From Heterodontus francisci (lineage: Eukaryota), in assembly GCF_036365525.1 (NCBI RefSeq), contig NC_090387.1:88701691-88765690 (forward strand): DNA of 64,000 nt, read 5' to 3'. A program made the position numbers and the translations under genes. This document shows, piece after piece, positions 22,751 through 36,888 of the stretch. The notes beneath the pieces are model-generated. The model saw only the letters and a program-made list of their open reading frames with translations, did not search any database and had not been told where the DNA came from. Positions within the stretch are counted from its first letter, which is position 1; every line of letters starts with the position of its first letter.

Positions 22751-22873
22751 AATATCCTGCCGACATTTGGACACAGCCTCACAACCCAGCGGACTGATCC
22801 TCCTGATGGAGAGCATCACGAACTGACGCTGCTTATCTTCAGTGAGCTTTCGAGTCAATTTGAAGCCTGACTG
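22751..22873 (+). other. Candidate 5'-UTR exon of the Ig-superfamily gene
   Basis: Donor CTG|GTGAGT at 22874. The ATG exon is preceded by a good acceptor (ctctttccccattccgttctcAG, 23523-23524), implying an upstream non-coding exon. 5' boundary uncertain. Confidence 0.35.
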
Positions 22874-23358
22874 GTGAGTTGTACCGCTGCTTGAGCTCTG
22901 AACTTGAACTGCAGTCACAGTTTATAACAAAATGGCTGACATCTATTGTCCACATAAGGCTCTCAAATTTGAAAACAAAAAAAAAAACAACTGGAAGGTA
23001 AATTTGAATGTCGACACAGTTATTCCATTGGCATCCAGTTCCCTTATCTACCACCAACTGATCCTGTCATCAGATCAATTAATTGTGGCTACATTCAGCA
23101 ATCTACTGTCCTTCTCAATTTTAAAATGCGTTTCTTGCCCGGATCTGCCCCACAGCCCTTTAGTACTCAGGCTATCCGTTTCAGGTCAGCCGAAGACCAA
23201 ATTAACAGATTCTAGGAACCAATATCACTGCAGACATTCACTACTTTTCCTCCCTGGCGGTTGAACAAACGATACGTTATGGACTTGGTATCTCATGTAC
23301 AAACTACTAACCCTCACCGCCCCCCCCCCCCCTTATTTTGCTGCAGCGACAGCCGGCT

Positions 23359-23380: not shown

Positions 23381-23560
23381 CACAACTATGTCGGTAGCTC
23401 TTACTCCAAAAGGCATACATTTCTTCACTCTGCAAGTAACCAGTCATGTGCTGCCTGACCTCACAGATCTGCATTGGATGATATTAGGCATCTATTCTAC
23501 ACTCTTTCCCCATTCCGTTCTCAGTCACAACGCCTGATCTACCGTATTGTCATTGCCGAT

Positions 23561-23615
23561 ATGGTTATGAATGGGTTATTATGTGGCATATGTTTTCTAG
23601 GCATTATGTATCCAG
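23561..23615 (+). CDS. Coding exon 1: signal peptide MVMNGLLCGICFLGIMYP
   Basis: ATG in gatATGg context, hydrophobic core, phase-1 donor CAG|GTATAC that joins the V exon in frame (G+TT = Val). Confidence 0.8.
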
Positions 23616-26600
23616 GTATACTTTTATTTTGTTGCATATTAACGGTTCCTTATTAATCAAAAACATAATTTTATCTGATAATTGACGTAAAATCGGATTT
23701 TTTTTCTGCTTTAATTTCGTGATCTTTTCGTGTCATATGTTCCTTGCCCGACAGAAAGCTCTGAGTGAGATAAAGGGGTCATTTATGATATTTCAATGCG
23801 GGCACAAATCTAGAAACTGGAGCATAATTCTGATAGTTAGGTAGACTAAATTGCTAATCTATCCATGGACTCTACGCAGGATGGTATTTTGGTGATGCAG
23901 ATCATCTTTTTATATGATTGATTTAACCGTTGTGTGCATCCTTTGTTGATAGTTGCTGTGGACTCCTCGGGTAATGCGACTCCTGATATTATACCAAAGA
24001 AGGTCCTCAGAGGTACAAATGTTGTTTTGCGATGTCCTTTCTCCTTTAATCTCAACCATTCAAACGTGATCGTTTATTGGTGGAGAGATGGTAATAAGAC
24101 CTTTCTGCAAGAGGACAGCAGAAAACTCTTCAGTGTAAAGAGAGGCGGCGCGTACCTTCACCTCTTGAATGTGACTGTCCCGGACGCCGGAACGTATTAC
24201 TGTGTAACCAAATACCAGTATCATACAGTTGGAGAAACAACTGGTGTGCAACTGGTTGTATATGGTAAGTGCCCTTGCAATTAAAAATGTCGAATGCGTT
24301 TAGCAATGTTTTTTTTAATAAGGAAAGACATTATGTACAAAATAGTACAGCGTCCTACATGTTTAGAAAGAAATGTGTTCAACAATGTGGGAAACGTCCA
24401 GTTCCAGCGACTGGAAGTAAATTTAAGTAAATGTTATTTGAACTGATGTTTGTCAAGGAAAGTGAATGCAAGGCTGGGAAGTAAAGAACTTTTTCAATTT
24501 GAGCACGGAGTAACAGGATGAAAATTGTTCGAGTTATTCACAATATCATACATTTCAAATGTAATTTAACCAGTTAGAAGAACCATATTTCTATTCCGTC
24601 GTTTACACGGTGAGTTTCTAGTTTCTGTGATCTTAGTGTAATTCCTGAACCGCTCTACGATGAAACTGGTGAAACGCATAGGATGCAGCAAATGCCCAAG
24701 TCCAAAGATTCCAGTTCAATCCTTTCTGTCCAGAAGAAGAAATGTTCTCGAAGAACCAGAAGAGTGCGTACTGCACTGTTGCAAAAACCTAAGAACAACA
24801 TGACGGTTCTAGCATACTCGGATTAATAGATGGAGTCCCAATGCTTGAAGCGTGTTTTGCCAGACATGCTGGTGATATGTCAATGCTGCAGTGAGGAAAC
24901 TCTAGCTATAATGTGATAAAGAATATATTGAGCTCCGGTCAGTATAAATAATGATTATTAGTGCAACTGCCATGCTTGAAATAGCTGTTGGTTATTTCAT
25001 GAAATCAAAGACATGATAGATGAGGAGTAAAAGGTTTTGCTTTATCTGAATCATGTCATTTATCCATTTAGCTACACCAGCTCCGCTGAAAATCTTATCC
25101 CCACCATCTGAAGGGGTAACATGTGTTCCTACGAGTCTCCAGTGCAGAACGTCTGCTTTTTACCCGAAGGACTTTAACCTCAGCTGGCATATAAACGGTA
25201 CCGAACTCTTGACTGGATTTACGAACGTACAACAGACAAAGACCCCGGAGGGACTCTTTGAAGTTATCAGTTCCTTGAAAGTGTCACAGGCAATCGATCG
25301 CGGCACAGTTTACACCTGTCAATTACATCACGTTTCTAACTTAATTCCAGCAAATGCCAGCTACACCTTTTCTAACGAAGGTAACATTATATGAGACGAG
25401 GTAATTTAATCACGAGAACATCGCACAAATGGGTATATACAAGAATCTGTGGGAAGTAATTACTGCAGGAGTTTGCATTATGGGTTGTCAACGCCGAGCT
25501 CTGGTCTAGTTGTTTAGTTGAAGTTTCCTTTTCTTTTGTTTATTTGGATGGGATGAGAAGTATGTTGTACAGAAGCAGCTTAGCCAATAGAGACATCAGC
25601 TCAAAGTAGTTCTCATAATTCAGATTAACTCCTGAACATTTCAATTCACAGAGGGATGGCACGTTGTGTGTTAATTCCATACACCGGAAAGGTTAGTGCG
25701 GACTGGAATGATAGAGTGGAGTAGTTGGAGCTTTGCACACTCCTGCAGCCATCAAGTAGTCCAAGTTCAGTCCCCGCTCTTTAGTGCGCGACTCCCTCGA
25801 TACTATATCAAACATGGAATGATAGGTAATTTGGTGAAACACATAGAAAGATGGAGAAAAGTCCTTCATGAAACATTGCTGCAAAGAGAATTTCAAGCGA
25901 ATTTGTAAATATGTCCCATTATAATATTTATCGGGGTTTGAGCTACAGGCTAATCCGATTAAACACACAACACTATTTGTTTTATTATTTCCTGACATGT
26001 TGCAAGTAGTAGAACACTTATTCTAAAGAACTTTACTTCCATTAATTAGTTGAGAACCATTCGGTGAGGTATTGTTCATATTGATTTCTCATTACTGACA
26101 TTTCTCCAGATTCATGTGTTTCAGACTCTTAGTGTGCGATTGCATAAAATGAAATGGATCTCTTGAGGCTTTATGTTCTGTAAATATTATATTATATTAT
26201 AGCATGTATATATGTATATATACACGCGTGCGCGTGCATATATGCATATGACATTTGCAGCTTTGCATATCTGTTTTACATTCCTGTTTCTAATTTTGAT
26301 TTTATGTTAATCTCATAGATTGCGCCTCCAAAATTGATTATGTTGTGATAGCTGGATGTGCCGGTGGTGCGCTTGTAGTCCTAGTATTAGCCATTATGAT
26401 TGTGAAGGGGCTTCTATTCATTATATCCAAAGGTATGAACTATCCACGCTTTCCTGTAGTTTATCTTCTGACAGCATATTATAACACATTATTTAAATTA
26501 GAAATTAATGGAAATACTGATATTAAAGCAAACAACTTACACGCAAGTATAGACTAGAATTATTGCAGTTCACATTTGGGAGGGGTAATACTGAATGGTA

Positions 26601-29600
26601 CAATTTAACTAACAGATTGATGAGAAAATACTGTTTAACATACATCTTTCTTCAACTGAAAATCTCCGCTACAATTTGCTAAACTGTATTGTTGAGTTAT
26701 AACCCTCTATTAGTGAATTTCATGGATGCAGTGATGTTCCCACAGCTTCATCAAAGAAATAACAAAATCATTGCGCCCAATTTTAACATTTTGAGATATA
26801 TTGTGAAACCAGTGGTCCCAGTATATCCAACAGATAGCAGAATTGTATTTGTTTCAGTTGGTGTTTGTGTTGGATGCAAATATAACACAGTTCTTGGTGA
26901 TGCATTTAATTTTATTTCTCACCAGGCGGGAAAAGAACATCATTAAATACAAGTCAGCATGCAGATCGGGTAAGACCATTTTATTTTTTTCCGTCTACTT
27001 TGTTTCAAAATTCCACTGATCGTTCGAGACATTGTACTCAAATGAATCTGCTTCAAGCATCTTTGGATTCAGTCTTGATGTTTCCTTGTTCTGTCGAAAG
27101 CACAATTTATTCTGTAAAGATTGGAATATAGAATAATGGCCGAAATCTTTACAAACCCGAACCTATTTTAGGAAGTCAGATATATTGTTTATTTAAAACT
27201 AACTCATCAAAATGTCATAATATTATAAACAAGAATTTATACTATTAAAGACGTCACACAACGTTGTTTGTTCCTTTGTGCTAACCAGGCGGACGTCATG
27301 ATGAATTAAAGTCGCAACATTGATTCTTGTGCGTTAAATTACATTAGGATCTCAATGGTCGGGTTGTACATGCACATGCAGATCATTATTGTCACCCATC
27401 CATTCTTCACTGCTCAAATTCAACACGTTATATACTCTTTGCCCAATGATTAAACCTGGCGTAAACCAGACGCGCGTAACTAAATAACAGAATAACCCGG
27501 AATATACAGAATAGCTGCATTCCAACAAGAAAGAAAATTCCAAGGAGAGGACTCACTATCCGCGGTTAACTAAAAAAGTTAAAGATAGCATGAATCTTAC
27601 AGAAAGAGCATATAATTGTGCAAAGATGGGTGGCAGGTCAGTAGACTGGACAGAATATAATAAAACGGCAAAGAACAACTAAAAGATGAATACGGAGGGG
27701 ATAATAGAGAACGAGGGAAAACTGGCTAGAAATATAAAAACAGAAAGTAAGAGTTTCTATAGATATTTCTCAAATGAAAGAGTTAACAAATTGAGCATTG
27801 GTCCTACAGAAAGTGAGTCTGCGAAATCAATAAGTGAAAATACAGAGATGGCAGATGAATTGTCCAAGTATTTTGCATCGGTCCTCCCGATAAGGAATAC
27901 AATTAACATCCCCGAAATAGTTGCAAATCAGGAAATGGAAGGGAGGGAGGAACTCAAGGAAATTACAATCACTGGGGAAGTAGTACTGAGCTAATTGTTG
28001 GAGATTCAGGCTGATAGGTTCTCGGGTCCTGATGGAACACATCCCAGGGTCTTAAAACAAGTGACTAGTGAGATAGTTGATGCGTTGGTTTGCATTTTCC
28101 AAAATCCCTAGATTTGGGGAAGATTCCATTAGATTGGATAACAGCCAATGTAACTTCTTTATTCAAAAAGGGAGGGAGACAGAAAGAAGCAAACTCAGGC
28201 CCAATAACTTAACAGCAGTCATCGGGAAAATATTAGAAGCTATTATTCAAGATATTATTGCAAGGTACTTAGAAAAAAAATCAAGGTAATCAGGTAGAGC
28301 TGACATTTTTTTTTTGAAAGGGAGATCATGCTTAACCAATTTAGTAGAATTATTTGAACAAGTAACGTACTGTGTATAAAGGGAGGTGGGTGGTTGTACT
28401 ACTTAGATTTCCAGTAGATATTTGATAAGGTGCCACATCAAAGCCAATTGCGGAAAATACATGCTCATTGTGTAGCGGGTAAAATTTTGGCATGGATGGA
28501 AAATTATCTCGCTGACAGGAAACAGAGCGTAGGCATAATTACGTCATGTTCTGGTTGCCAAGATGTAACATGTGATGTCCCACAGGGATCAGTGCCGAGG
28601 TCTGAACTTTAAAAAAATATATATAAATGGCTTTGATGAAGGGACTGAAGGGATGCTTGCGAAGTTTGCTGATGACACAAATATAGGTACAAAGATACGT
28701 TGTGAAGAGGACATAAGGAGAGTACAAAGTGATATAGATAGGTTAGGTAATTTGGCAAAAATCTGGAAAATTGAGTACAATGTAGGAAAGTGTGAAATTG
28801 TCTATTTTGGCAGGAAGAATAAAATGAAACATGTTATCAAAATGGTGAGATTGCAGAGCTCTGAGAAGCAGAGGGATCTGGGTGTCCTAGTGCACGAATC
28901 ACAAACGGCCAGTATGAGGGTGCAACAAGTAATTAGGAAAGCTAATTGAATGTGATTGTTTATTGCAAAGGGAATTGAATACAAAAGTAAGATGGTCACT
29001 CTTCAGTTATATAGGCGACTGTTGAGATCAGTTTGGAGTACTGCGTACAGTATTGATCTCCTTATTTAAGAAAGGATGTAACTGTCGAAAGCAGTTCAAA
29101 GAAGGTTTACGAGCATAATACTTGGAATGGGTGTTTGTTTTTTCTTATGAGAAAAGATTGAAGAGGCGTGGCTTGATTCCGCTGGTGTTTAGAGGAGTAA
29201 GGGACGATTTGATTGAAATATGTAAGATTCTGAGCCGTCTTGACAGGGTGGATGTAGAAAGGATGTTTCCTCTTGGAGGGAGAATCGATAACTCCATGCT
29301 GGATTTTGCAATGTGTTGGGGGTGGGGTAGGGGGCGGCGTGGGGTGAGCCATCAACGGAATGAAAAGGGTTGGTGGAGAACCCGCATCAGCCAGGCCTGG
29401 GGATTCAGAGCGGATTTTCGGGTCCCCAGGCATATAATTGGTGTTTGTTGGGACTTCCACCTCATGTGGCGGAAAGTTCAGACTAATGGAGCTGCCGGCT
29501 AAAAAGCGGACCGGAAGCTCATAGTCCCAGCAGCGCCGCCAGGCAGGATGGCCGCTGCTGAGACTGCAGCCCAGCTCAAGGATGAAGATGACGGAGAGCA

Positions 29601-32600
29601 CCGTAAAACTGGTAAGCTTTAGAGGCCTCATCGAGGGCAATTGATCAGGCCGTGGTGAGGCAAGGGGGATCAGTTAGGGGGGTGGGGGCGTGTTTAGATT
29701 TGTGGATGGTTGGGACATCGGGGGCAGCCCTCCGTAGGGCACATTTTGCCCGATGAGGTGGGCTGTCTCCAGGTCGCCAGAAGACAGCCTAGTTTTATCA
29801 GGCAGCTTTTCTGAGGCTTCAGCTGCCTACCAACTAACCGTGAAGTCGCCTTGTTGGCATGCAGAGTCACTTAAGTGACCATTAATTGGCTATTTTAGGG
29901 CCTTGATTGGCCTGAGGTGAATGGTCTGTTTTCTGCCGCTGCTGGCCCACATAAATTGGCAGTGGATGCATGAGTAAGTCAGAAAGGGCCCTCCCAGCCT
30001 CCCACTCCACTTTACGCACCACCCCACCCTTCTCAACACCACCCCCCCCACCCCCTCCCACCGTCCCCATCCTGCCACTAGCCCACTCTTTGGGGGGAAT
30101 GCAATTCTGGCCTGGGGTCACTTTTAAAAGTAAGGGGTGACCTATTTAAAACAGAGATAAGGAGAATTTTTTTCGCTGTGATGGTTGAGTCTTTGGAACT
30201 CTCCTTGTCGAAAGGCGATGGAAGCAGAGTATTTGAATATTTTTAAGGCAGAGGTAACCCTTGATAAGAAAAGGGAAGAAAGGTTATTGGGGGTAGGTGG
30301 GAATGTGGAATTGAGGTTACAATCAGATTATGCATGATCTTATTGAATAGCAGAGCAGGGTCGAGGGGCTGAGAGGCTTCTAATTCATATGTTCGCATGC
30401 TCATATGTAACAGTTTATGCTTTGCCGCCAACTTGCAGTCCTCTATCACAAGCTGGCATCCTCAAACAACATATAATTGCAAGGTCTTCTCACAGTTGGC
30501 CGAACAAACTGCGGTGCATGGAAGGTTGAAAAAGTTGACTTGATGCCACAGCGCACATTTCTCGAGATGTGGGTGTTGTTGGCAAAGTCGCAATCAACTG
30601 GCCAGAACGTGTTGATGGGTCATCTTCTTGAACCGCTGAGAGCAGTTTCGTACAATGGAATGACTTTCGAGGCGAATTCATAGGACAGTTTGCACGCAAT
30701 CGTTTTAGCCATGTTCTGCAACCACATGTACGATAGACCGGGTGGGAACATGAAAACCTTATTGAATACGTTTTTTTAGAACAATTCAACAGCTTCAGAA
30801 ATAGTTGTTCATTTTTAATTATTTCTTCATTTTTTTAGACATTGCGTTCAATTCTCAAGCTACCATTTTAATTAATCCGCTGAACGTTATTGTCATGACT
30901 GATGAATAGCTTGACAAAACTGTGGAAAAGGTCGCTGTAAATATATGTTCTTCAAGACATTAAGAATAATTTGAGATTCCCCCATGCCTTTACAACAGAT
31001 AACGTGTTACCATTAGGTATTTCCTCATCTCGGATCTCTGTTCTCTCTCCTAATTGGACACTGTGGCCCTGACTACATGCAAATTTTCATTTAATTTTAG
31101 GATTGGAGGAGACCTTTAAAGCAGAGCCGTAACAATCAGGCCCAGGAATGGCGTGCATTCAATACTATGATCTGACACATGCCCACAACAGCGTTCCATC
31201 CAGCTAACAGATAATAAGGATTCCGGTGCCCTCAGGTGCCCTTAGACCAATAAGCTATTTATTTTCACATAACGTACATGAATATAAATCATGTGTTAAT
31301 CACAAGAGAGTATAGTAATTTCTCGTCTTCGATATTATAAAACATTTACCAACTATATCGACTGACGCCCTGGAACATTCTTTCATCTGCGCAACCCAGA
31401 AGTTAGATATACAAATTGGCCCATCCCGTATGCATTCCACAGAGGCTGTCAGCTTGAGGTTCACAGCCAATGTTATGTGAATATGCAAGACCGTAAAATG
31501 GGCGTCAATCAGTATTAAGTATCCGGGAATTCACGCCAGATACTGCATCTATAAATATGTTGCTACTCTGATTTTCCCATCATTTGTGAAGAATACGCAT
31601 CGAGCTTAAGAACCTAAGATCGGAAGCTTTGGAAATTTGAAGATGATTTATGCTCATAACAGAAAAATGACAGAAGTAGAAAATATACTGCAGGACTCAT
31701 ACGAACATGCGAGTTAGCAGTAGGCCGCTCGGCCCCTCAAAACTGCTCCGCCATTCGATAAGGTCATGGCAGAACTGATTACTCCACATTTCCAACTGCC
31801 CCTCATAACCTTTCACCTGCTTGCTTATCAAGAATGTATCTACCTCTGCCTTTAAAATAGTCAAAGACTCTACTTCTACCGCCTTTTGAGGAAGAGAATC
31901 CCAAAGACTCACGGCCATCTGAGAGAAAATAAAATCTCCTTATCTCTGTCTTAAATGGGCGACCCCTTAATTTTAAACAGTGAACCCCAGTTCTAGATTT
32001 TCCCACAAGAGAGAATCCCAGATCCTTTCCACATCCACCCTGCCAAGCTCCCTCAGGATCTTATATGTTTCAATCCAGTCGCCGCTTACGCTTCTATATT
32101 CCAGAGGATACAAGCCTAGCTTGTTCAATATTCCCTTGGAAGGCAGCCCACCCATTCCAGGGATCAGTCTGTACCGCCTCCAACGCATTTAGATCCTTTC
32201 TTAAATAAGGATACCAGTACTTTGCACAGTACTCCAGATGTAGTCTCACCAATACTCTGTATAGCTGAAGCATAACCACCCTACTTTTGTGTTTATTTCC
32301 CCTCACGATAAACAGCAACATTCTATTAGTCTTCCTAATTATGCGCTGTACCTGCATACTAACCTTTTGCGATTCATACACTAGGACACCCAGATCCCTT
32401 TTAATTTCAGAGCTCTGCAATCCCTCACCATTTAAATACTATGCTTGTTTGTATTCTTTCTGCCAAGGTGGACAATGTCCCACTTTCTCACATCATGCTC
32501 CATTTGCTGGGTTTTTGCCCACTCACATAGCCTATCCATATCTCTTTGTAACCCGCTTATGTCGTCTTCACAAGTTACCTTCTTACCTATCTTTGTGTCA

Positions 32601-35600
32601 TCAGAAAGCATACCTTCGTTCCTTCATCTAAGTAACTTATATGAATTGTGAAAAGTTGAGGCCCCAACATAGATCCCTGTGGCAGACCACTCGTTACATC
32701 TTGGCAATCAGAAAATTACCCATTCATGCCTACTTTCCTGTTAGCTATCCAACCTTCGCTCCATGCTAACTTTGTACCCTCTACACCATGAACTTTTGTT
32801 TTCTGCACTAACCTTTGATGTGGCACCTTATCAAATGCCTTCTGGAAATCTAAGTGCAATACATCCTCCAGTTACCGTTTATCCACAGCACATGTAACTC
32901 CTTCAAAGAACTCCAATAAATTGGTTGAACATCATTTCCCTTTCACAAGACCATGTTGACTGTGCCTGAACTCCTCTATTTCTTTCTAAATGCACTGCTA
33001 TAACGTTAATAATAGCTTCTGAAGACAGAGGTTAAGCTAACTGACCTGCAGTTTCCTACTTTCTGTCTCCCTTCCTTTTGGAATAAAGGATTTACATTGG
33101 CTATTTCCCAATCTAATGGAACCTTCCCGAATCAAGGGAATTTTGGAAAATTATAACTAATGCATCAACTATTATACTAGCCACTTCATGTAACACCCTA
33201 GGATAAAGTCCATCAGGCCCGAGGGCTTTCCAGGCCGCAGCTCTAAGAATTTGTTCAGTGCCACTTCCCTGGTGATTGTAATTTCCTTGAGTTCCTCCCT
33301 CCATTCAATTTCCTGATTTACAGCTAATACTGAGATGTTACTTGTATCCTCAATAGTGAACACCGATGACAAATGTCTGTTCAATTCATGTGTCATCTCC
33401 TTATTATCAATTATTAATTCTCCAGACTCACTTTATATAGGAAAAATACTTACTTTATTAACCCTTTTATTTCTGAAATATCTACAGAAACTCTAACTAT
33501 CTGTCTTTATATTTCTAATTAGCTTTCTCTCGTACTCGAATTGTACCTTACTTATCACTCTTTTAGTCATTATTTGCTATTTTTTATATTCTGTCCAATC
33601 TTCTGACCTTCCTCCCATCTTTGCACAATTATTTGTTTTTTTTCTTTTAAGTTTCATACTATCTGTAACTGTTTCAGTTAACCACCGATGGCGGCTCCCA
33701 TCTTTGGAATGTTTCTTTCTCGTTGCAATGTATTTATTCTGTGTATTCTGAATAATCCCATTAAATATCTGCCACTGCACCTTTATTGACCAATCTATTA
33801 ACGTAAATTTCCAACTTTCTTCAGCTAGCTCTGCTTTCATGGCCTCATAATTGCCATTATTTAAGCTTAAAGTACGAGTCATGGGCTCACTCTTCTCTTT
33901 CTCAAACCGAATGCAAAATTCAATCATATTATGATCGCTGCTACCTCGGGGTGCCTAAACTACGAGGTCATTAATTAATCCTATCGCGTTGCACAATACA
34001 AGGTCTAGTACAAACTGCTCTCTGGTTAGTTCCAGAACGTCCTGTTCCAAGAAAGTATCCTGAAATCATTCTATGTACTCCGCATCTAGGCTACCTCTGG
34101 CCATCTGATTTTTCCAATCTATATGCAGGTTAAAACCCCCATAATTATTGCTGTAGCTTTCTGACAAGTTGCCATTATGTCTTCCCTTACACACCGTCCT
34201 ACAGTGTGTTTAATGTTAGGTGGCCTGTACACCACTCCCAGAAGTGACTTCTTGCCTTGATGATTTTTCATTTCTATCCAAACTGCTTCTACATCTGGTT
34301 TCCTGAACTTAGATCATCGCTCTCCATTGTGCTAATATCATCATTACTTAACAGATCTACCCCTGCACCTTTTCTTAGCTTCCTGTCCTTCCTAACTGCC
34401 GAGTACCCTTCAATATTCAGGTCCCAATCTATGTCTCTGTTATGGCTAGCAGATTGTACTTATTTATTTCTATTTGCACGCTCAGACCATCTGTTTTGTT
34501 TTGAATGCTACATGCATTCAGACACAGAGCTTTTAGTTTTGTCCTTTTATTATTTTTGTGTGCTCTAGCCTTATCTGTTGGTTTGCTCTTAGATTTTTAC
34601 GCTTGGTCCCTGTCACAATCTGCTTACTATTTCCCATATTAATACCTTTCTGTCTTGCCATGTCTCGGCTCTTTGATTTTCCACATCTTCCCAAATTTGA
34701 TCCCTCACCCCCAACTATGCAGTTTTATACCCTCTCCACCTCCCTAGTTATGCAGCTCGCCAGTACACCGACCCCAGCACGGTTCAGTTGCAGACTATCC
34801 CAACGGTACACCACTTTCCCCAGTCCTGGTGCCAGTGCCCCATGAACCGGAATCCACTTCTATCACACCAATCTTTGAGCCAGGCATTAATTTCTATAAT
34901 ATCATTTGCCCTATGCCAATTTGCACGTGGCTTGGTTATAACGCAGAGATTATTACCTTTGAAGTTCTGCTTCTTAATTTAGTGAGGGTATTTTTTTCAA
35001 AAATTGCACTAAAACACCAAGTCAAAGGACTTTATTTCTTGGTGCGCCTGGAAATATGATAGTCATATTGAGATGACCTTCAAGCAAGCGTTATTGCACG
35101 ACATTCATATCTAGTTCTCAGTAGCTGGGCGTTGCACCTTTATAATAGGTGGAGATGCAATTGGGTGTCGGGATAAATAGGCAACCATAAAATATAGAGG
35201 AGATTTGGGAATATTGTATTTGTACACATCACATGGTTAAGCCAACATTGCTCAGTATTTTAAATCACCTAATTCGTTTGTGTCCAGATTACGTGTGCCT
35301 CTGCGCGCAAGTACAAAGCAAATTAAACCCTTCCTGGAACTTTGACAGAAAGCGTGAAAAAATGGTACACCAAAAAAATCTTACACCAAATAAATCTTTA
35401 AATTCATAACTGCGCTGTTGAACTCTGTAGGTAATCTCTTAAAGGCGCACTGCAGGAGCTAAAATCATAATGTACGTTGATGTTCACGTGCAATACTCAG
35501 CGTGTTATTCATGGCCTTATTTGCAGTGGTGCAGATCAACAGACAAACCACGGCTTCCTACGGTTGGTCAATATTACCTGGAAGATCTGAGGACACGATT

Positions 35601-36888
35601 TTAAAAATAGCATGCAATTCTTGCGATATGTGCTTTAGCCAAAACAAAATCAACACAGAAAAACTGGCCATTTGTTTGTTTTGTTTTGTTTTGTTTTTTG
35701 CAATTATTTACCTGAGCATGCTCTGCATCAACTGATTGGCATATTTGTCTAAATGAAAAAGAACAATAACCACGTCATAGAAATAAGAAATTTGCTGCTA
35801 AATACTTGGGAACATCCAGTGTACTTGGACGATCCAATGTAAATACAATCTTAAGTGTTAGCTTTTCGAGCCTTCAATCGAAATGCTTGCCTTCCTCATT
35901 TTATAGCCGGCATAATTATTAACCTGGTTTTCCATTTACGACTATATATGATTTGTTTCTATACTTTATTTTTCTTTAATTCAACCGTTTAACTATACAT
36001 TTATTTATCCTGTAATTACGCCACATGCTCGAAGGTAAGGAAGGCGCCATTGAATATTTGCCCCTCAATTTACTATTTTATGCTTTGTATATCCGAACAA
36101 GGTAACGCAGCGCAATCCATGTTTTTTTTTTATTTATACCAATTGAAGTTTGAAGTAATGAATATAACAAACTGCATTCTCAATTTATAACAGAACGTAA
36201 TGGAGCATAGCATTTTTTTTTTGTGAATGTAGAAAAACGATTATTTTGCACTGAAGCGTAAAACGTATTCTTCAGGAAATAGCATAGTTGCAGAGGTTCT
36301 CTGCTAAATTTCAACATATTGAACAATGGCGTTTATGAGTTTGCAAGCAGTTTAGAACCGTAAAATCCAGTAGCTTCTGATTATTGTTCCTTGGCGAGCA
36401 GTAGATCGCTATTAGCAATGGCAATGCAAAAATGCTGCCCTAATTTCCCATGATAATAATCGTTTCTTGACTCTTGGAACTCCGGAAAAGTAAGTTAATG
36501 AATGCTAAACATGGATTTTCCAGAAAGAACGAGAGGCATCTGAGGACAAACTGATGAACGCTTCTCTTTTTGTGGTCGGCTCAAGGGAACGTGAAATTCC
36601 AAAACAACACGAAGAAAGCAGAGAATATGCAGAGGTATATCTCAATTCAGACGTGGAAACAATAGTTGGTGCAGAGATGATATTAGAAAGTAATTATTTA
36701 GAAATTTTCCTACAACTCTTTGAACGAAAATTAAAACATCCTCAACTTATGTTTTACAGGCCAAACAGAGCACCACTGACAGCAACCTGACTTACCTTGC
36801 TCTGAATTTGACTGGTTCTACGAAAACGGCGAAGTCTAAACACAAAGAAACAAGTCTAGTCTACGCAGCGGTTAAAAACAGCAACTAA
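23561..36888 (+). CDS. Ig-superfamily V-C1-TM receptor with ITIM tail (SIRP-like; not assignable to a named ortholog); join(23561..23615,23953..24264,25072..25380,26319..26432,26926..26969,36524..36664,36760..36888)
   Basis: All junctions GT-AG with compatible phases (1,1,1,1,0,0), no internal stops, and a coherent domain order of signal peptide, V, C1, TM, cytoplasmic tyrosine motifs. Confidence 0.85.
23953..24264 (+). CDS. Coding exon 2: V-like Ig domain
   Basis: Acceptor gatAG 23951-23952; VVLRC (B strand), VYWWR (C), YLHL (E), DAGTYYC (F), GVQLVV (G); donor G|GTAAGT 24265. Confidence 0.93.
25072..25380 (+). CDS. Coding exon 3: C1-set Ig domain
   Basis: Acceptor catttAG 25070-25071 (in-frame alternative ccAG 25079-25080); LQC..SAFYPKD..LSW..NG, GLFEVISSL, YTCQLHH (C1 signature YxCxxxH); donor AG|GTAACA 25381. 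Confidence 0.93.
26202..26250. repeat. 49-bp alternating purine/pyrimidine tract
   Basis: gcatgtatatatgtatatatacacgcgtgcgcgtgcatatatgcatatg. Confidence 0.8.
26319..26432 (+). CDS. Coding exon 4: stalk and transmembrane segment (D)CASKIDYVVIAGCAGGALVVLVLAIMIVKGLLFIISK
   Basis: Acceptor ctcatAG 26317-26318; phase 1-1; long hydrophobic run; donor AG|GTATGA 26433. Confidence 0.9.
26926..26969 (+). CDS. Coding exon 5: juxtamembrane (G)GKRTSLNTSQHADR
   Basis: Acceptor ttatttctcaccAG, donor CGG|GTAAGA; converts phase 1 to phase 0 as the downstream exons require. Confidence 0.78.
27505..30410 (+). mobile_element. Intronic 5'-truncated decayed CR1 LINE
   Basis: ARNIKTESKSFYRY, VPQGSV, AKFADDT, EYNVGKCE..FG; tail near 30385-30410. 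Confidence 0.9.
29295..30112. mobile_element. GC-rich non-coding insertion (probable non-autonomous DNA transposon) inside the CR1
   Basis: CR1 sequence gagaatcgataact resumes as ggggtcac at about 30113; ends are loosely inverted (gctggattttgca ... tgcaattctggcc). Confidence 0.6.
31698..34983 (-). mobile_element. Intronic decayed CR1 LINE (ORF2 and end of ORF1)
   Basis: LYRVLVRLHLEYCAKYW.PYLRKD..ALEAVQ, GPDGLYPRVL.EV, and ORF1 3' part at 34740-34980. Confidence 0.92.
36524..36664 (+). CDS. Probable coding exon 6: KEREASEDKLMNASLFVVGSREREIPKQHEESREYAEVYLNSDVETI (duplicate of the terminal tyrosine-motif exon)
   Basis: Acceptor ggattttccAG; phase 0; ungapped alignment to the terminal exon. Donor is either ATA|GTTGGT (36665) or GAG|GTATAT (36635); both are phase 0 and both weak. 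Confidence 0.6.
36760..36888 (+). CDS. Terminal coding exon: AKQSTTDSNLTYLALNLTGSTKTAKSKHKETSLVYAAVKNSN* with two ITIMs
   Basis: Acceptor gttttacAG; LTYLAL and LVYAAV both fit (S/I/V/L)xYxx(I/V/L); TAA at 36886-36888. Too short to appear in the ORF track. Confidence 0.85.
   Translation, partial: AKQSTTDSNLTYLALNLTGSTKTAKSKHKETSLVYAAVKNSN

What the first reader, a model, noticed from the sequence alone, without database searches (positions are those of the whole stretch)
23561..36888. Germline-encoded V-C1 inhibitory receptor: antigen-receptor-like ectodomain on a SIRP-like tail
Seen: a complete in-phase gene encoding leader, V, C1, TM and cytoplasmic ITIMs, with seven N-glycosylation sequons (NAT, NHS, NKT, NVT, NLS, NGT, NAS). 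The V exon already includes its G strand and ends at a splice donor, with no recombination signal visible. Known: C1-set domains are largely confined to Ig, TCR, MHC/beta-2-microglobulin, tapasin, SIRP and B7-H6-type molecules. Mammalian SIRP-alpha is V-C1-C1, and single V-C1 non-rearranging receptors are discussed as relatives of the antigen-receptor precursor. Inference: this is a member of a poorly characterised chondrichthyan leukocyte receptor family, likely to be auto-annotated only as SIRP-like, tapasin-like or NCR3LG1-like. It is the best candidate for an undescribed system here.
Basis: partly seen in the sequence, partly recalled or inferred. Interest (0 to 1): 0.8.

Follow-up and report, generated by a model that had tools for sequence, protein, structure and literature searches.

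The report
Horn shark SIRP-like V-C1 inhibitory receptor
This is a real, spliced and transcribed horn-shark gene for a "brake"-type immune receptor built like a single antibody light chain or T-cell-receptor chain that never rearranges. It is one more member of a large shark, ray and chimaera family that databases list only under inconsistent automatic names.

Summary
A seven-exon gene on the + strand (CDS 23561-36888) encodes leader, V-like domain, C1-set domain, transmembrane helix and a tail with two canonical ITIMs (LTYLAL, LVYAAV, 23 residues apart). All introns are GT..AG.

Spliced contigs from two public runs of one sample show exon joints 2>3, 3>4 and 4>5. Overhangs match 1>2 and 5>6. 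The 6>7 joint was not observed. No recombination signal lies at the V exon, and all seven sequons are present.

The gene sits in a 100/100-supported clade of a cartilaginous-fish family. That family has long-tailed (inhibitory) members, members with an arginine in or beside the membrane anchor, and tail-less members. Automatic names include SIRP-alpha-like, SIRP-beta-like, tapasin-related, NCR3LG1-like and Ig-lambda-like.

The ectodomain scores at least as well against Ig/IgNAR/UrIg2 domains as against SIRP. The four-tyrosine tail layout (23/14/23) parallels SIRP-alpha (24/17/24). This copy has lost the first tyrosine and has a degenerate J motif.

I found no paper on the family, but three key papers were not held. 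The scan has already reported this family at several other places in this genome. Ligand, cell type and synteny remain untested.

The parts
22844..22873 (+). 3' end of an alternative upstream exon (donor gtgagt at 22874) spliced directly to the V exon, skipping the leader exon. An in-frame TGA at 22861-22863 means this form has no signal peptide in frame.
   Evidence: 29 overhanging letters of X1 contig record 3. Unique exact match at 22844-22872. Sequence read.
23450..23615 (+). Exon 1: 5' UTR (contigs reach back at least to 23450/23462) plus the leader CDS 23561-23615 (MVMNGLLCGICFLGIMYP + 1 nt, phase 1).
   Evidence: (records 1, 2, 8; 9-nt overhang TTGCTGTGG = start of exon 2).
23953..24264 (+). 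Exon 2: end of leader plus a V-like domain with its own G strand (VGETTGVQLVVY). Cys-Cys spacing is 56, there are four sequons, and there is no C'' strand.
   Evidence: Pfam V-set 3.4e-8. AlphaFold strands A'BC(C')DEFG, pLDDT >90. No RSS. 11-residue gap against the SIRP-alpha C'-C'' region.
25072..25380 (+). Exon 3: C1-set constant domain (FYP...W...YTCQLHH), three sequons, and an extra Cys in the A-B loop.
   Evidence: Pfam C1-set 3.6e-13. PDB best domain is UrIg2 C3 at 35 bits, with Ig kappa C at 42 bits. Spliced joints on both sides.
26319..26432 (+). Exon 4: stalk with a Cys (DCASK), an uncharged transmembrane helix (VVIAGCAGGALVVLVLAIMIV) and the start of the tail.
   Evidence: AlphaFold helix 225-264. 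Joints 25380>26319 and 26432>26926.
26926..26969 (+). Exon 5: 44-nt cytoplasmic exon (G-GKRTSLNTSQHADR), which takes the phase from 1 to 0.
   Evidence: Located with the public protein. Spliced joint and 30-nt overhang equal to the start of exon 6.
26970..36523 (.). Intron 5, 9.55 kb, inflated by decayed reverse-transcriptase-like ORF fragments on both strands (about 27.7-34.2 kb).
   Evidence: ORF list. Weak RVT_1 match, E 0.009, below Pfam's cut-off. No contig coverage of the intronic bins laid, 26996-27100.
36524..36634 (+). Exon 6: first two-tyrosine tail unit, degenerate. Tyr1 is replaced by Asn (KLMNASL, codon AAC). The second site is REYAEA, which is not an ITIM.
   Evidence: The orthologue-like Stegostoma protein has LTYAAL and TVYAET here.
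36760..36888 (+). Exon 7: second two-tyrosine unit with ITIM LTYLAL (36787-36804), ITIM LVYAAV (36856-36873) and stop TAA. At least about 230 nt of 3' UTR is inferred to follow.
   Evidence: The X2 contig runs 473 nt beyond exon 5. Exon 6 against exon 7 DNA: 61 identical positions, score 44 against shuffles 14 +/- 8, 0 of 500 reached it.

Best explanation
An intact, transcribed horn-shark gene (RefSeq XP_067905931.1) encodes a type I membrane receptor. It has a glycosylated, non-rearranging V domain with a built-in, partly degenerate J-like G strand, one C1-set domain, an uncharged transmembrane helix, and a cytoplasmic tail whose last exon carries two canonical ITIMs 23 residues apart.

Shown here: the gene structure, splicing, domains, motifs and family membership.

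Inferred from established ITIM biology (as for SIRP-alpha): ligand binding by the V domain leads to Src-family phosphorylation of the two ITIM tyrosines. The tandem SH2 domains of SHP-1/SHP-2 dock on them, and activation signals in the expressing cell are damped.

The gene belongs to a cartilaginous-fish-wide multigene family of V(J)-C1 receptors. That family also contains members with an arginine in or beside the membrane anchor (likely activating) and tail-less members, so it resembles a paired-receptor system of the SIRP-alpha/beta/gamma kind. The tail consists of two tandem copies of a two-tyrosine unit. In this copy the first unit has decayed, so inhibition would rest on exon 7.
For: Gene model and identity to the public protein.

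Domains. The AlphaFold ectodomain has pLDDT >90.

Spliced transcripts in two runs, with no coverage of the intronic bins between the laid exons apart from one low-depth, mismatched contig in intron 2 (24491-24697).

ITIMs and spacing.

Family: 481 hits to the V exon, the single-domain ones inspected being chondrichthyan V-C1 proteins. Word and profile searches return only chondrichthyans until SIRP-alpha at 127 bits. The tree places the gene with its 91%-identical twin P0002 inside a 14-member clade (100/100) that mixes long-tail and short-tail members.

Arginine in or at the edge of the membrane anchor in P0165-P0167, P0162, P0164 and P0011.

Tail layout 23/14/23 is conserved from chimaera to sharks and rays, against 24/17/24 in SIRP-alpha, and the family HMM aligns co-linearly across C1-TM-tail.

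ITIM to SHP-1/2 signalling for SIRP-alpha: PMC12975943.
Against: No ligand, cell type, phosphorylation or SHP binding has been shown.

The RNA evidence comes from one sample of one study, as assembled contigs whose RNA status is inferred from splicing.

This copy lost Tyr1, its second tyrosine site is non-canonical, and its J motif is degenerate. That could mean relaxed constraint.

A second transcript form skips the leader exon at similar contig depth.

Its closest paralogue has no ITIM tail.
Confidence: 0.75

Rival explanations
1. It is a true SIRP-alpha orthologue, that is an already characterised receptor that binds CD47, which simply has one C1 domain fewer.
For: The best non-chondrichthyan relative is SIRP-alpha (E 1.5e-11; 127 bits with the family profile). 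The four-tyrosine tail is co-linear. Many members carry automatic SIRP names.
Against: There is one C1 domain, not two. The V domain lacks the C'-C'' region that SIRP-alpha has. The family profile scores SIRP-alpha V+D2 at 58 bits, against about 76-85 bits for Ig light chains. SIRP V and SIRP C1 are not among the best 60 PDB hits for the V-only profile or the C1 exon. It is a large, many-gene family on several chromosome pieces, not a one-to-one orthologue. Synteny was not testable.
Confidence: 0.1
2. The family is a surviving non-rearranging branch of the antigen-receptor lineage (kin of Ig/TCR/UrIg rather than of SIRP), and its SIRP-like tail is convergent or acquired by exon shuffling.
For: The architecture is that of one TCR or IgL chain: V(J)-C1-TM with a split leader. 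Most family members carry FGNGTGSxLxV. Among single domains the V-only profile hits shark IgNAR V best (46 bits). The C1 exon hits UrIg2 C3, Ig kappa C and IgG CH3 best. The full profile ranks UrIg2 and light chains level with or above SIRP per domain. UrIg and UrIg2 show that such relics exist in sharks (PMC12227049).
Against: All these scores are modest and close together. HMM bit scores are not a phylogeny, and I could not build V and C1 trees with Ig, TCR, tapasin and B7-H6 because no such sequences were obtainable through the tools. The tail similarity to SIRP-alpha is co-linear over four motifs and is continuous with C1 and TM. Linkage to the MHC or the antigen-receptor complex was not examined.
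Confidence: 0.15
3. It is a B7-H6-type molecule, a ligand for the multi-copy shark NKp30 (NCR3) receptors, rather than a receptor itself.
For: The best structural match of the model is human B7-H6 (Z 14.7, rmsd 2.4 A over 180 residues, 27% identity; Foldseek TM 0.72). B7-H6 is also V-C1. Two clade members are auto-named NCR3LG1-like.
Against: That Z is tied within 1 unit with hundreds of light chains. B7-H6 is not among the best 60 PDB hits of the family profile, whereas SIRP-alpha, SIRP-gamma, UrIg2 and light chains are. The J-type G strand places the family with the joined-VJ receptor set listed in PMC11599192. Paired ITIM and charged-anchor versions are a receptor hallmark. The key paper on B7H6/NKp30 evolution was not held.
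Confidence: 0.06
4. The gene is on its way to becoming a pseudogene and the transcripts have no function.
For: Loss of Tyr1, a degenerate second motif and a degenerate J motif. A 9.5-kb transposon-laden intron before the ITIM exons. A leader-skipping transcript. The sister gene lost its tail.
Against: The 357-codon frame is intact across seven exons with canonical splice sites. The Ig-fold core residues, all seven sequons and two canonical ITIMs are retained. The correctly spliced mRNA was assembled in two runs. The terminal branch is short (0.053).
Confidence: 0.05

Closest known systems
SIRP family (SIRP-alpha/beta/gamma; PTPNS1)
   Same: N-terminal V-type domain of the joined-VJ kind followed by C1-set domain(s). 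Single-pass membrane anchor. A tail built from two tandem two-tyrosine units with almost the same spacing (23/14/23 against 24/17/24) and similar motifs (xTYAxL, TxYAxx). The family also holds inhibitory, charged-anchor and tail-less versions. SIRP-alpha is the best relative outside cartilaginous fish.
   Different: One C1 domain instead of two. The V domain is about 11 residues shorter and has no C'' strand. Ectodomain scores are no closer to SIRP than to Ig light chains. It is a large lineage-specific expansion. The ligand is unknown and CD47 binding is untested. This copy keeps only three of the four tyrosines.
UrIg / UrIg2 (non-rearranging shark VJ-C1 genes, PMC12227049; PDB 9dmx)
   Same: A germline-joined VJ exon with a split leader and C1-type constant domains, found in elasmobranchs. 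The UrIg2 C3 domain is the best single PDB domain match of this C1 exon (35 bits).
   Different: UrIg has three C domains and is secreted. UrIg2 has nine to eleven C domains. Neither is described with an ITIM tail. Here there is one C1 and an inhibitory tail, and sequence similarity is only at generic C1 level.
Ig light chain / TCR chain / IgNAR V
   Same: V(J)-C1 domain order with one C1. The short V lacking C'' is like IgNAR V, which is the best single-domain PDB hit of the V profile (46 bits). The full profile scores light chains at about 76-85 bits.
   Different: No RSS, and V and J lie in one exon. The predicted V-C arrangement is extended rather than a Fab elbow (rmsd about 10 A to light chains). 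The tail signals by itself.
B7-H6 (NCR3LG1)
   Same: V-C1 ectodomain. It is the best structural superposition of the whole model (Z 14.7, rmsd 2.4 A, 27% identity).
   Different: B7-H6 is a ligand. It is not among the top sequence-profile hits. No paired ITIM/charged-anchor family is known to me for it (my own knowledge; not checked here).
Teleost novel immune-type receptors (NITR)
   Same: Non-rearranging V with a J motif, ITIM-bearing and activating versions, large lineage-specific clusters. NITR13 is hit by the family profile at 69 bits.
   Different: The second NITR domain, where present, is not C1-set. No C1-set family is listed among the Pfam families for the NITR13 hit. NITRs are confined to bony fish.

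Membership tests
Cartilaginous-fish SIRP-like V(J)-C1 receptor family (unnamed; RefSeq models only) | Falls inside the family clade in an ectodomain tree, with close relatives in several shark and ray species. | tested here: met
   14-member clade with 100/100 support. Sister to P0002 (100/100), then to Stegostoma/Hemiscyllium genes (90/93). 48-61% identity to shark and ray proteins.
Cartilaginous-fish SIRP-like V(J)-C1 receptor family (unnamed; RefSeq models only) | Leader - short V with J-type G strand - hinge (A/P)P(T/A)PL - one C1 (FYP..W..YTC.V.H) - TM - tail of two-tyrosine units. | tested here: met
   Alignment A1. In this copy the J motif is degenerate (GETTG instead of GKGTG or GNGTG) and Tyr1 is lost.
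SIRP family | Ectodomain of V-set plus two C1-set domains. | tested here: not met
   Only one C1 exon. No further Ig exon anywhere in the 64-kb window. The SIRP architecture is as stated in PMC12975943.
SIRP family | Inhibitory member has a four-tyrosine ITIM tail that recruits SHP-1/SHP-2. | tested here: inconclusive
   The layout is conserved in the family (23/14/23 against 24/17/24) and aligns co-linearly. This gene keeps three tyrosines and two canonical ITIMs. SHP binding is not testable here.
SIRP family | Binds CD47 through the V domain. | not testable with these tools
   No binding data. The V domain lacks the C'-C'' region present in SIRP-alpha.
SIRP family | Orthology by conserved synteny with the SIRPA/SIRPB locus. 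| not tested
Rearranging antigen receptors (Ig/TCR) | V gene segment ends in a recombination signal (heptamer-spacer-nonamer), with J on a separate segment. | tested here: not met
   No heptamer or RSS-like pair in 23900-24500. The V exon contains the G strand and ends at donor GTAAGT, and is spliced to C1 in RNA.
Rearranging antigen receptors (Ig/TCR) | V domain followed by a C1-set domain. | tested here: met
   Pfam V-set and C1-set. The profile scores light chains at about 76-85 bits.
UrIg / UrIg2 | VJ exon followed by three or more C1-type domains (PMC12227049). | tested here: not met
   A single C1 exon.
B7 family / B7-H6 | V-C ectodomain with an extended arrangement. | tested here: met
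   Z 14.7, rmsd 2.4 A over 180 residues to 3pv7_A. This is tied with light chains on Z.
B7 family / B7-H6 | Sequence-level kinship to B7-H6 above other V-C1 families. | tested here: inconclusive
   B7-H6 is absent from the best 60 PDB hits of the family profile, so it scores under 75.8 bits, whereas SIRP-alpha scores 94.8 and light chains up to 85. No B7-H6 sequence could be put into a tree.
ITIM-bearing inhibitory receptors (functional class) | Cytoplasmic (I/V/L/S)xYxx(L/V/I), ideally two copies 20-30 residues apart, and an uncharged TM. | tested here: met
   LTYLAL and LVYAAV, 23 residues apart. No charged residue in the TM core.

The most novel reading that the evidence does not exclude
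This family could be the cartilaginous-fish counterpart of a pre-RAG antigen receptor. That would be a membrane-bound, non-rearranging V(J)-C1 chain with its own signalling tail, more closely related to Ig/TCR/IgNAR/UrIg than to SIRP. On this reading, SIRP-type tails and paired inhibitory/activating signalling were already attached to antigen-receptor-like ectodomains in early jawed vertebrates. The expanded family would then serve sharks as their polymorphic paired-receptor system, in the role KIR, LILR or NITR play elsewhere.
Probability: 0.15. Interest if true: 0.8.

Novelty: new variant of a known kind. Interest (0 to 1): 0.45.

Why it matters
Non-rearranging genes with a joined VJ exon and a C1 domain are the material used to reconstruct how antibodies and T-cell receptors arose. 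The recent UrIg and UrIg2 papers show how much weight single genes of this kind carry.

This family has exactly the domain order of one TCR or light chain, plus a membrane anchor and a SIRP-type inhibitory tail. It is present from chimaeras to sharks and rays. It therefore offers many testable genes for three questions:
- What did V-C1 receptors do before or beside rearrangement?
- Are SIRPs and antigen receptors sister lineages?
- What do cartilaginous fish use as paired inhibitory/activating receptors?

This particular copy adds little by itself. It documents birth-and-death evolution within the family: a 91%-identical twin without a tail, the loss of one ITIM, a decayed J motif and a leader-skipping transcript.

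Tried and rejected
1. Paralogues in the window: tblastn of every exon product against the window found none, so the gene is alone among transposon debris.
2. Rfam scan of the window: nothing.
3. RSS search: nothing.
4. C1-region-restricted word search: only 31 candidates and three hits, so uninformative.
5. C1-only profile against PDB: the top 60 are all multi-C1 Ig heavy chains, so whole-chain scores could not rank SIRP, B7-H6 or tapasin per domain.
6. ESM Atlas: only generic V-C1/V-C2 clusters (B7-like, tapasin-related), with no discrimination.
8. Literature: searches for UrIg, SIRP with cartilaginous fish, signal regulatory protein with elasmobranch, PRARP, and B7H6/NKp30/shark found no description of this family. 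Three key papers were not held: PMC10530332, PMC6761025 and PMC3709836.
10. Pfam on the intron 5 ORFs: only a sub-threshold RVT_1 hit.

Joined step: I handed no self-joined exon model to any search tool. Searches used single exons or the public RefSeq protein by its id. In one sandbox script the seven exons were concatenated, only to test identity with that public protein, and only true/false was printed.

Full report
**What is in the sequence**

A seven-exon gene lies on the + strand between 23561 and 36888. The exons are:
- 23561-23615: leader, 18 codons plus 1 nt.
- 23953-24264: V-like domain.
- 25072-25380: C1 domain.
- 26319-26432: stalk and transmembrane helix.
- 26926-26969: 44 nt of tail.
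- 36524-36634 and 36760-36888: two tail exons, ending in stop TAA.

Every acceptor is AG and every donor is GT. The phases are 1-1-1-1-0-0. The translation is identical to a public protein of 357 aa, XP_067905931.1, "uncharacterized protein [Heterodontus francisci]". The window is therefore horn-shark DNA and the gene is already predicted. Its length of 367 aa is ten too many, and it does not mention the 44-nt exon.

Pfam calls the exon 2 product V-set (3.4e-8) and ig (4.2e-9), and the exon 3 product C1-set (3.6e-13). All seven N-glycosylation sequons are there. Nothing else in the 64-kb window resembles any of the exons. The rest is reverse-transcriptase debris, and Rfam finds nothing.

**Not rearranging**

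The V exon holds its own G strand (VGETTGVQLVVY) and ends at a GTAAGT donor. There is no CAC.GTG heptamer and no heptamer/nonamer pair within 23900-24500 on either strand. RNA joins the V exon directly to C1.

**Transcription**

Two of them hold the stretch, at word shares of 0.43 and 0.21. The higher share matches the exon share of the query.

The results:
- Spliced contigs with GT..AG joints 24264>25072, 25380>26319 and 26432>26926.
- A 9-nt overhang behind 23615 equal to the start of exon 2.
- A 30-nt overhang behind 26969 equal to the start of exon 6 at 36524.
- One contig continuing 473 nt beyond exon 5, which is enough for exons 6 and 7 plus about 230 nt of 3' UTR.
- No coverage of the intronic bins, apart from one low-depth, mismatched contig in intron 2.

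So the ITIM tail is joined to the V-C1-TM part in RNA.

Limits: this is one sample, the data are assembled contigs, RNA status is inferred from splicing, and the exon 6-exon 7 joint was not itself laid.

A second form joins an upstream exon ending at 22873 (donor GTGAGT) straight to the V exon, skipping the leader exon. It has an in-frame stop, so it has no signal peptide in frame.

**Family**

An exhaustive HMMER search with the V exon alone gave 481 hits. Apart from giant multi-Ig proteins, the single-domain hits I inspected are 220-450-aa proteins of sharks, rays and the chimaera Callorhinchus, with the same V-C1-TM plan.

Their source names are inconsistent:
- SIRP-alpha-like (tyrosine-protein phosphatase non-receptor type substrate 1-like)
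- SIRP-beta-1-like and SIRP-gamma-like
- tapasin-related-like
- NCR3LG1-like
- Ig lambda-1-like
- H-2 class II beta-like
- TCR-beta-like
- uncharacterized

In an ectodomain tree rooted on rodent SIRP-alpha, the gene pairs with a 91%-identical horn-shark twin (P0002, whose model ends just after exon 5 and has no ITIM). The pair sits inside a 14-member, 100/100-supported clade of sharks and rays. That clade mixes three kinds of member:
- Long-tailed members.
- Members whose membrane anchor carries, or is bordered by, an arginine and whose tail is short (WIVRG..., ...YRS...).
- Tail-less members.

This is the pattern of a paired inhibitory/activating receptor family.

**Ectodomain affinities**

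The AlphaFold model, built on a 41-sequence family alignment, has pLDDT above 90 for residues 30-225. The V domain has strands A'BC(C')DEFG. There is no C'' strand and only about 12 residues lie between C and D. The family HMM needs an 11-residue gap opposite the SIRP-alpha C'-C'' region.

Most of the family carries a canonical J motif (FGNGTGSxLxV). The gene's own clade has VGKGTG. This copy has VGETTG, which lacks the second glycine.

Comparisons with solved structures:
- **V-only profile:** among single domains it matches shark IgNAR V best (46 and 45 bits). IgNAR V also lacks C'', and SIRP V is not in the best 60.
- **C1 exon:** it matches UrIg2 domain C3 (35 bits), Ig kappa constant (42 bits) and IgG CH3 ahead of any SIRP chain.
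- **Whole-family profile:** it gives UrIg2 104.8 bits (four domains), SIRP-alpha ectodomain 94.8 (three domains), SIRP-gamma 82.7, B7-H3 87.7 (four domains) and light chains 76-85 (two domains). Split up, SIRP-alpha V+D2 gives 58 bits.
- **Fold:** the extended V-C1 model superposes best on B7-H6 (Z 14.7, rmsd 2.4 A, 180 residues, 27% identity). That Z is tied with hundreds of light chains, which differ only in elbow angle.

The ectodomain is thus a generic antigen-receptor-type V(J)-C1 unit. It is at least as near to Ig/IgNAR/UrIg as to SIRP, and these scores cannot settle the branching order.

**Tail**

Outside cartilaginous fish, the best relative of the whole protein is SIRP-alpha (E 1.5e-11 with the single protein, 127 bits with the family profile). 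Teleost NITR13 comes next at 69 bits.

About 30 bits of the SIRP-alpha score come from beyond the ectodomain. The HMM aligns the membrane-proximal C1, the TM and the tail of SIRP-alpha co-linearly, motif on motif.

Family tails have four tyrosines spaced 23/14/23 from chimaera to rays, for example MVYATL, TVYAQT, VTYAAL and TEYAEI. Rodent SIRP-alpha has ITYADL, TEYASI, LTYADL and SEYASV spaced 24/17/24.

Each tail exon carries one two-tyrosine unit. Exons 6 and 7 of this gene still align at the DNA level: 61 identical positions, score 44 against 14 +/- 8 for shuffles, with 0 of 500 shuffles reaching it.

In this copy the first unit has decayed. Tyr1 is Asn (codon AAC) and the second site is REYAEA. 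The second unit keeps two canonical ITIMs, LTYLAL and LVYAAV, 23 residues apart.

**Mechanism (inferred)**

By analogy with SIRP-alpha (PMC12975943), I infer three steps:
- Ligand engagement by the V domain.
- Phosphorylation of the two ITIM tyrosines.
- Docking of the tandem SH2 domains of SHP-1/SHP-2, which damps activation.

None of this was shown here. The ligand and the expressing cell type are unknown.

Two cysteines are peculiar to this gene and its twin, one in the C1 A-B loop and one in the stalk. They could form an interchain bridge.

**Comparison with known systems and novelty**

It fails the SIRP architecture test, with one C1 rather than two. It fails the defining test of rearranging receptors, with no RSS. 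It fails the UrIg test, which needs three or more C domains (PMC12227049). It is structurally like B7-H6 but has receptor hallmarks.

It is best filed as a member of an unnamed cartilaginous-fish family of SIRP-like V(J)-C1 paired receptors. That makes it a variant of a known kind, not a new kind.

I found no paper on the family. PMC11599192 lists SIRP, NITR, NKp30, CD8, CD79 and PRARP as the joined-VJ set and does not include such a shark family in that list. Three directly relevant papers were not held, so "undescribed" is provisional.

The scan's own notes show that other agents reached the same reading for sister genes at several other places in this genome, on this chromosome piece and on others. 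I treated those notes as leads and re-derived the family, the tail and the V-domain claims independently.

**Not done**

- Outgroup-rich domain trees were not built because no comparator sequences were obtainable through the tools.
- I did not search with a self-joined model. I searched exon by exon or with the public RefSeq protein by id. The exons were concatenated once in a sandbox script, only to verify identity with that protein.

Noticed in passing
window 22844-22873 (donor at 22874): An upstream exon is spliced directly to the V exon, skipping the leader exon, at a contig depth similar to the leader-containing form. It has an in-frame TGA, so no signal peptide is in frame. It may be a non-coding or regulatory isoform, or a true first exon with optional leader skipping.
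   Followed up: partly
window 25122-25124 (C1 exon, GVTCVP) and exon 4 (NEDCASK, 26319-26432): Two extra cysteines are shared only with the 91%-identical twin P0002 and are not conserved in the clade. They could form an interchain disulfide or an extra intrachain bond.
   Followed up: no
window 26970-36523: The 9.55-kb intron before the ITIM exons is filled with decayed reverse-transcriptase-like ORFs on both strands, resembling the larger RT ORFs at 40.6-44.0 kb and 52-59.9 kb of the window. Pfam gives only a sub-threshold RVT_1 hit.
   Followed up: partly
protein P0002 (XP_067905013.1), same 99.65-Mb chromosome record: The twin gene has a 91%-identical ectodomain and its model stops just after exon 5, so it has no ITIM tail. 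The C1 domain (86%) is more diverged than the V domain (94%). An earlier scan note places a tail-less copy 11.7 Mb upstream. I did not verify that it is the same gene.
   Followed up: partly
proteins P0158 / P0015 (horn shark, same chromosome record): A clade member has its four-tyrosine tail module duplicated again, giving eight spaced tyrosines. It also has an annotated isoform that skips the C1 exon (V-TM-tail).
   Followed up: no
protein P0161 (Hemiscyllium ocellatum, 546 aa, 'CDON-like'): This public gene model fuses two neighbouring family genes (V-C1-TM followed by V-C1-TM-tail). It is an annotation artefact that shows tandem arrangement in that species.
   Followed up: partly
window 24491-24697 (intron 2): A low-depth contig with 9 mismatches lies here. 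It probably comes from a repeat copy transcribed elsewhere.
   Followed up: no
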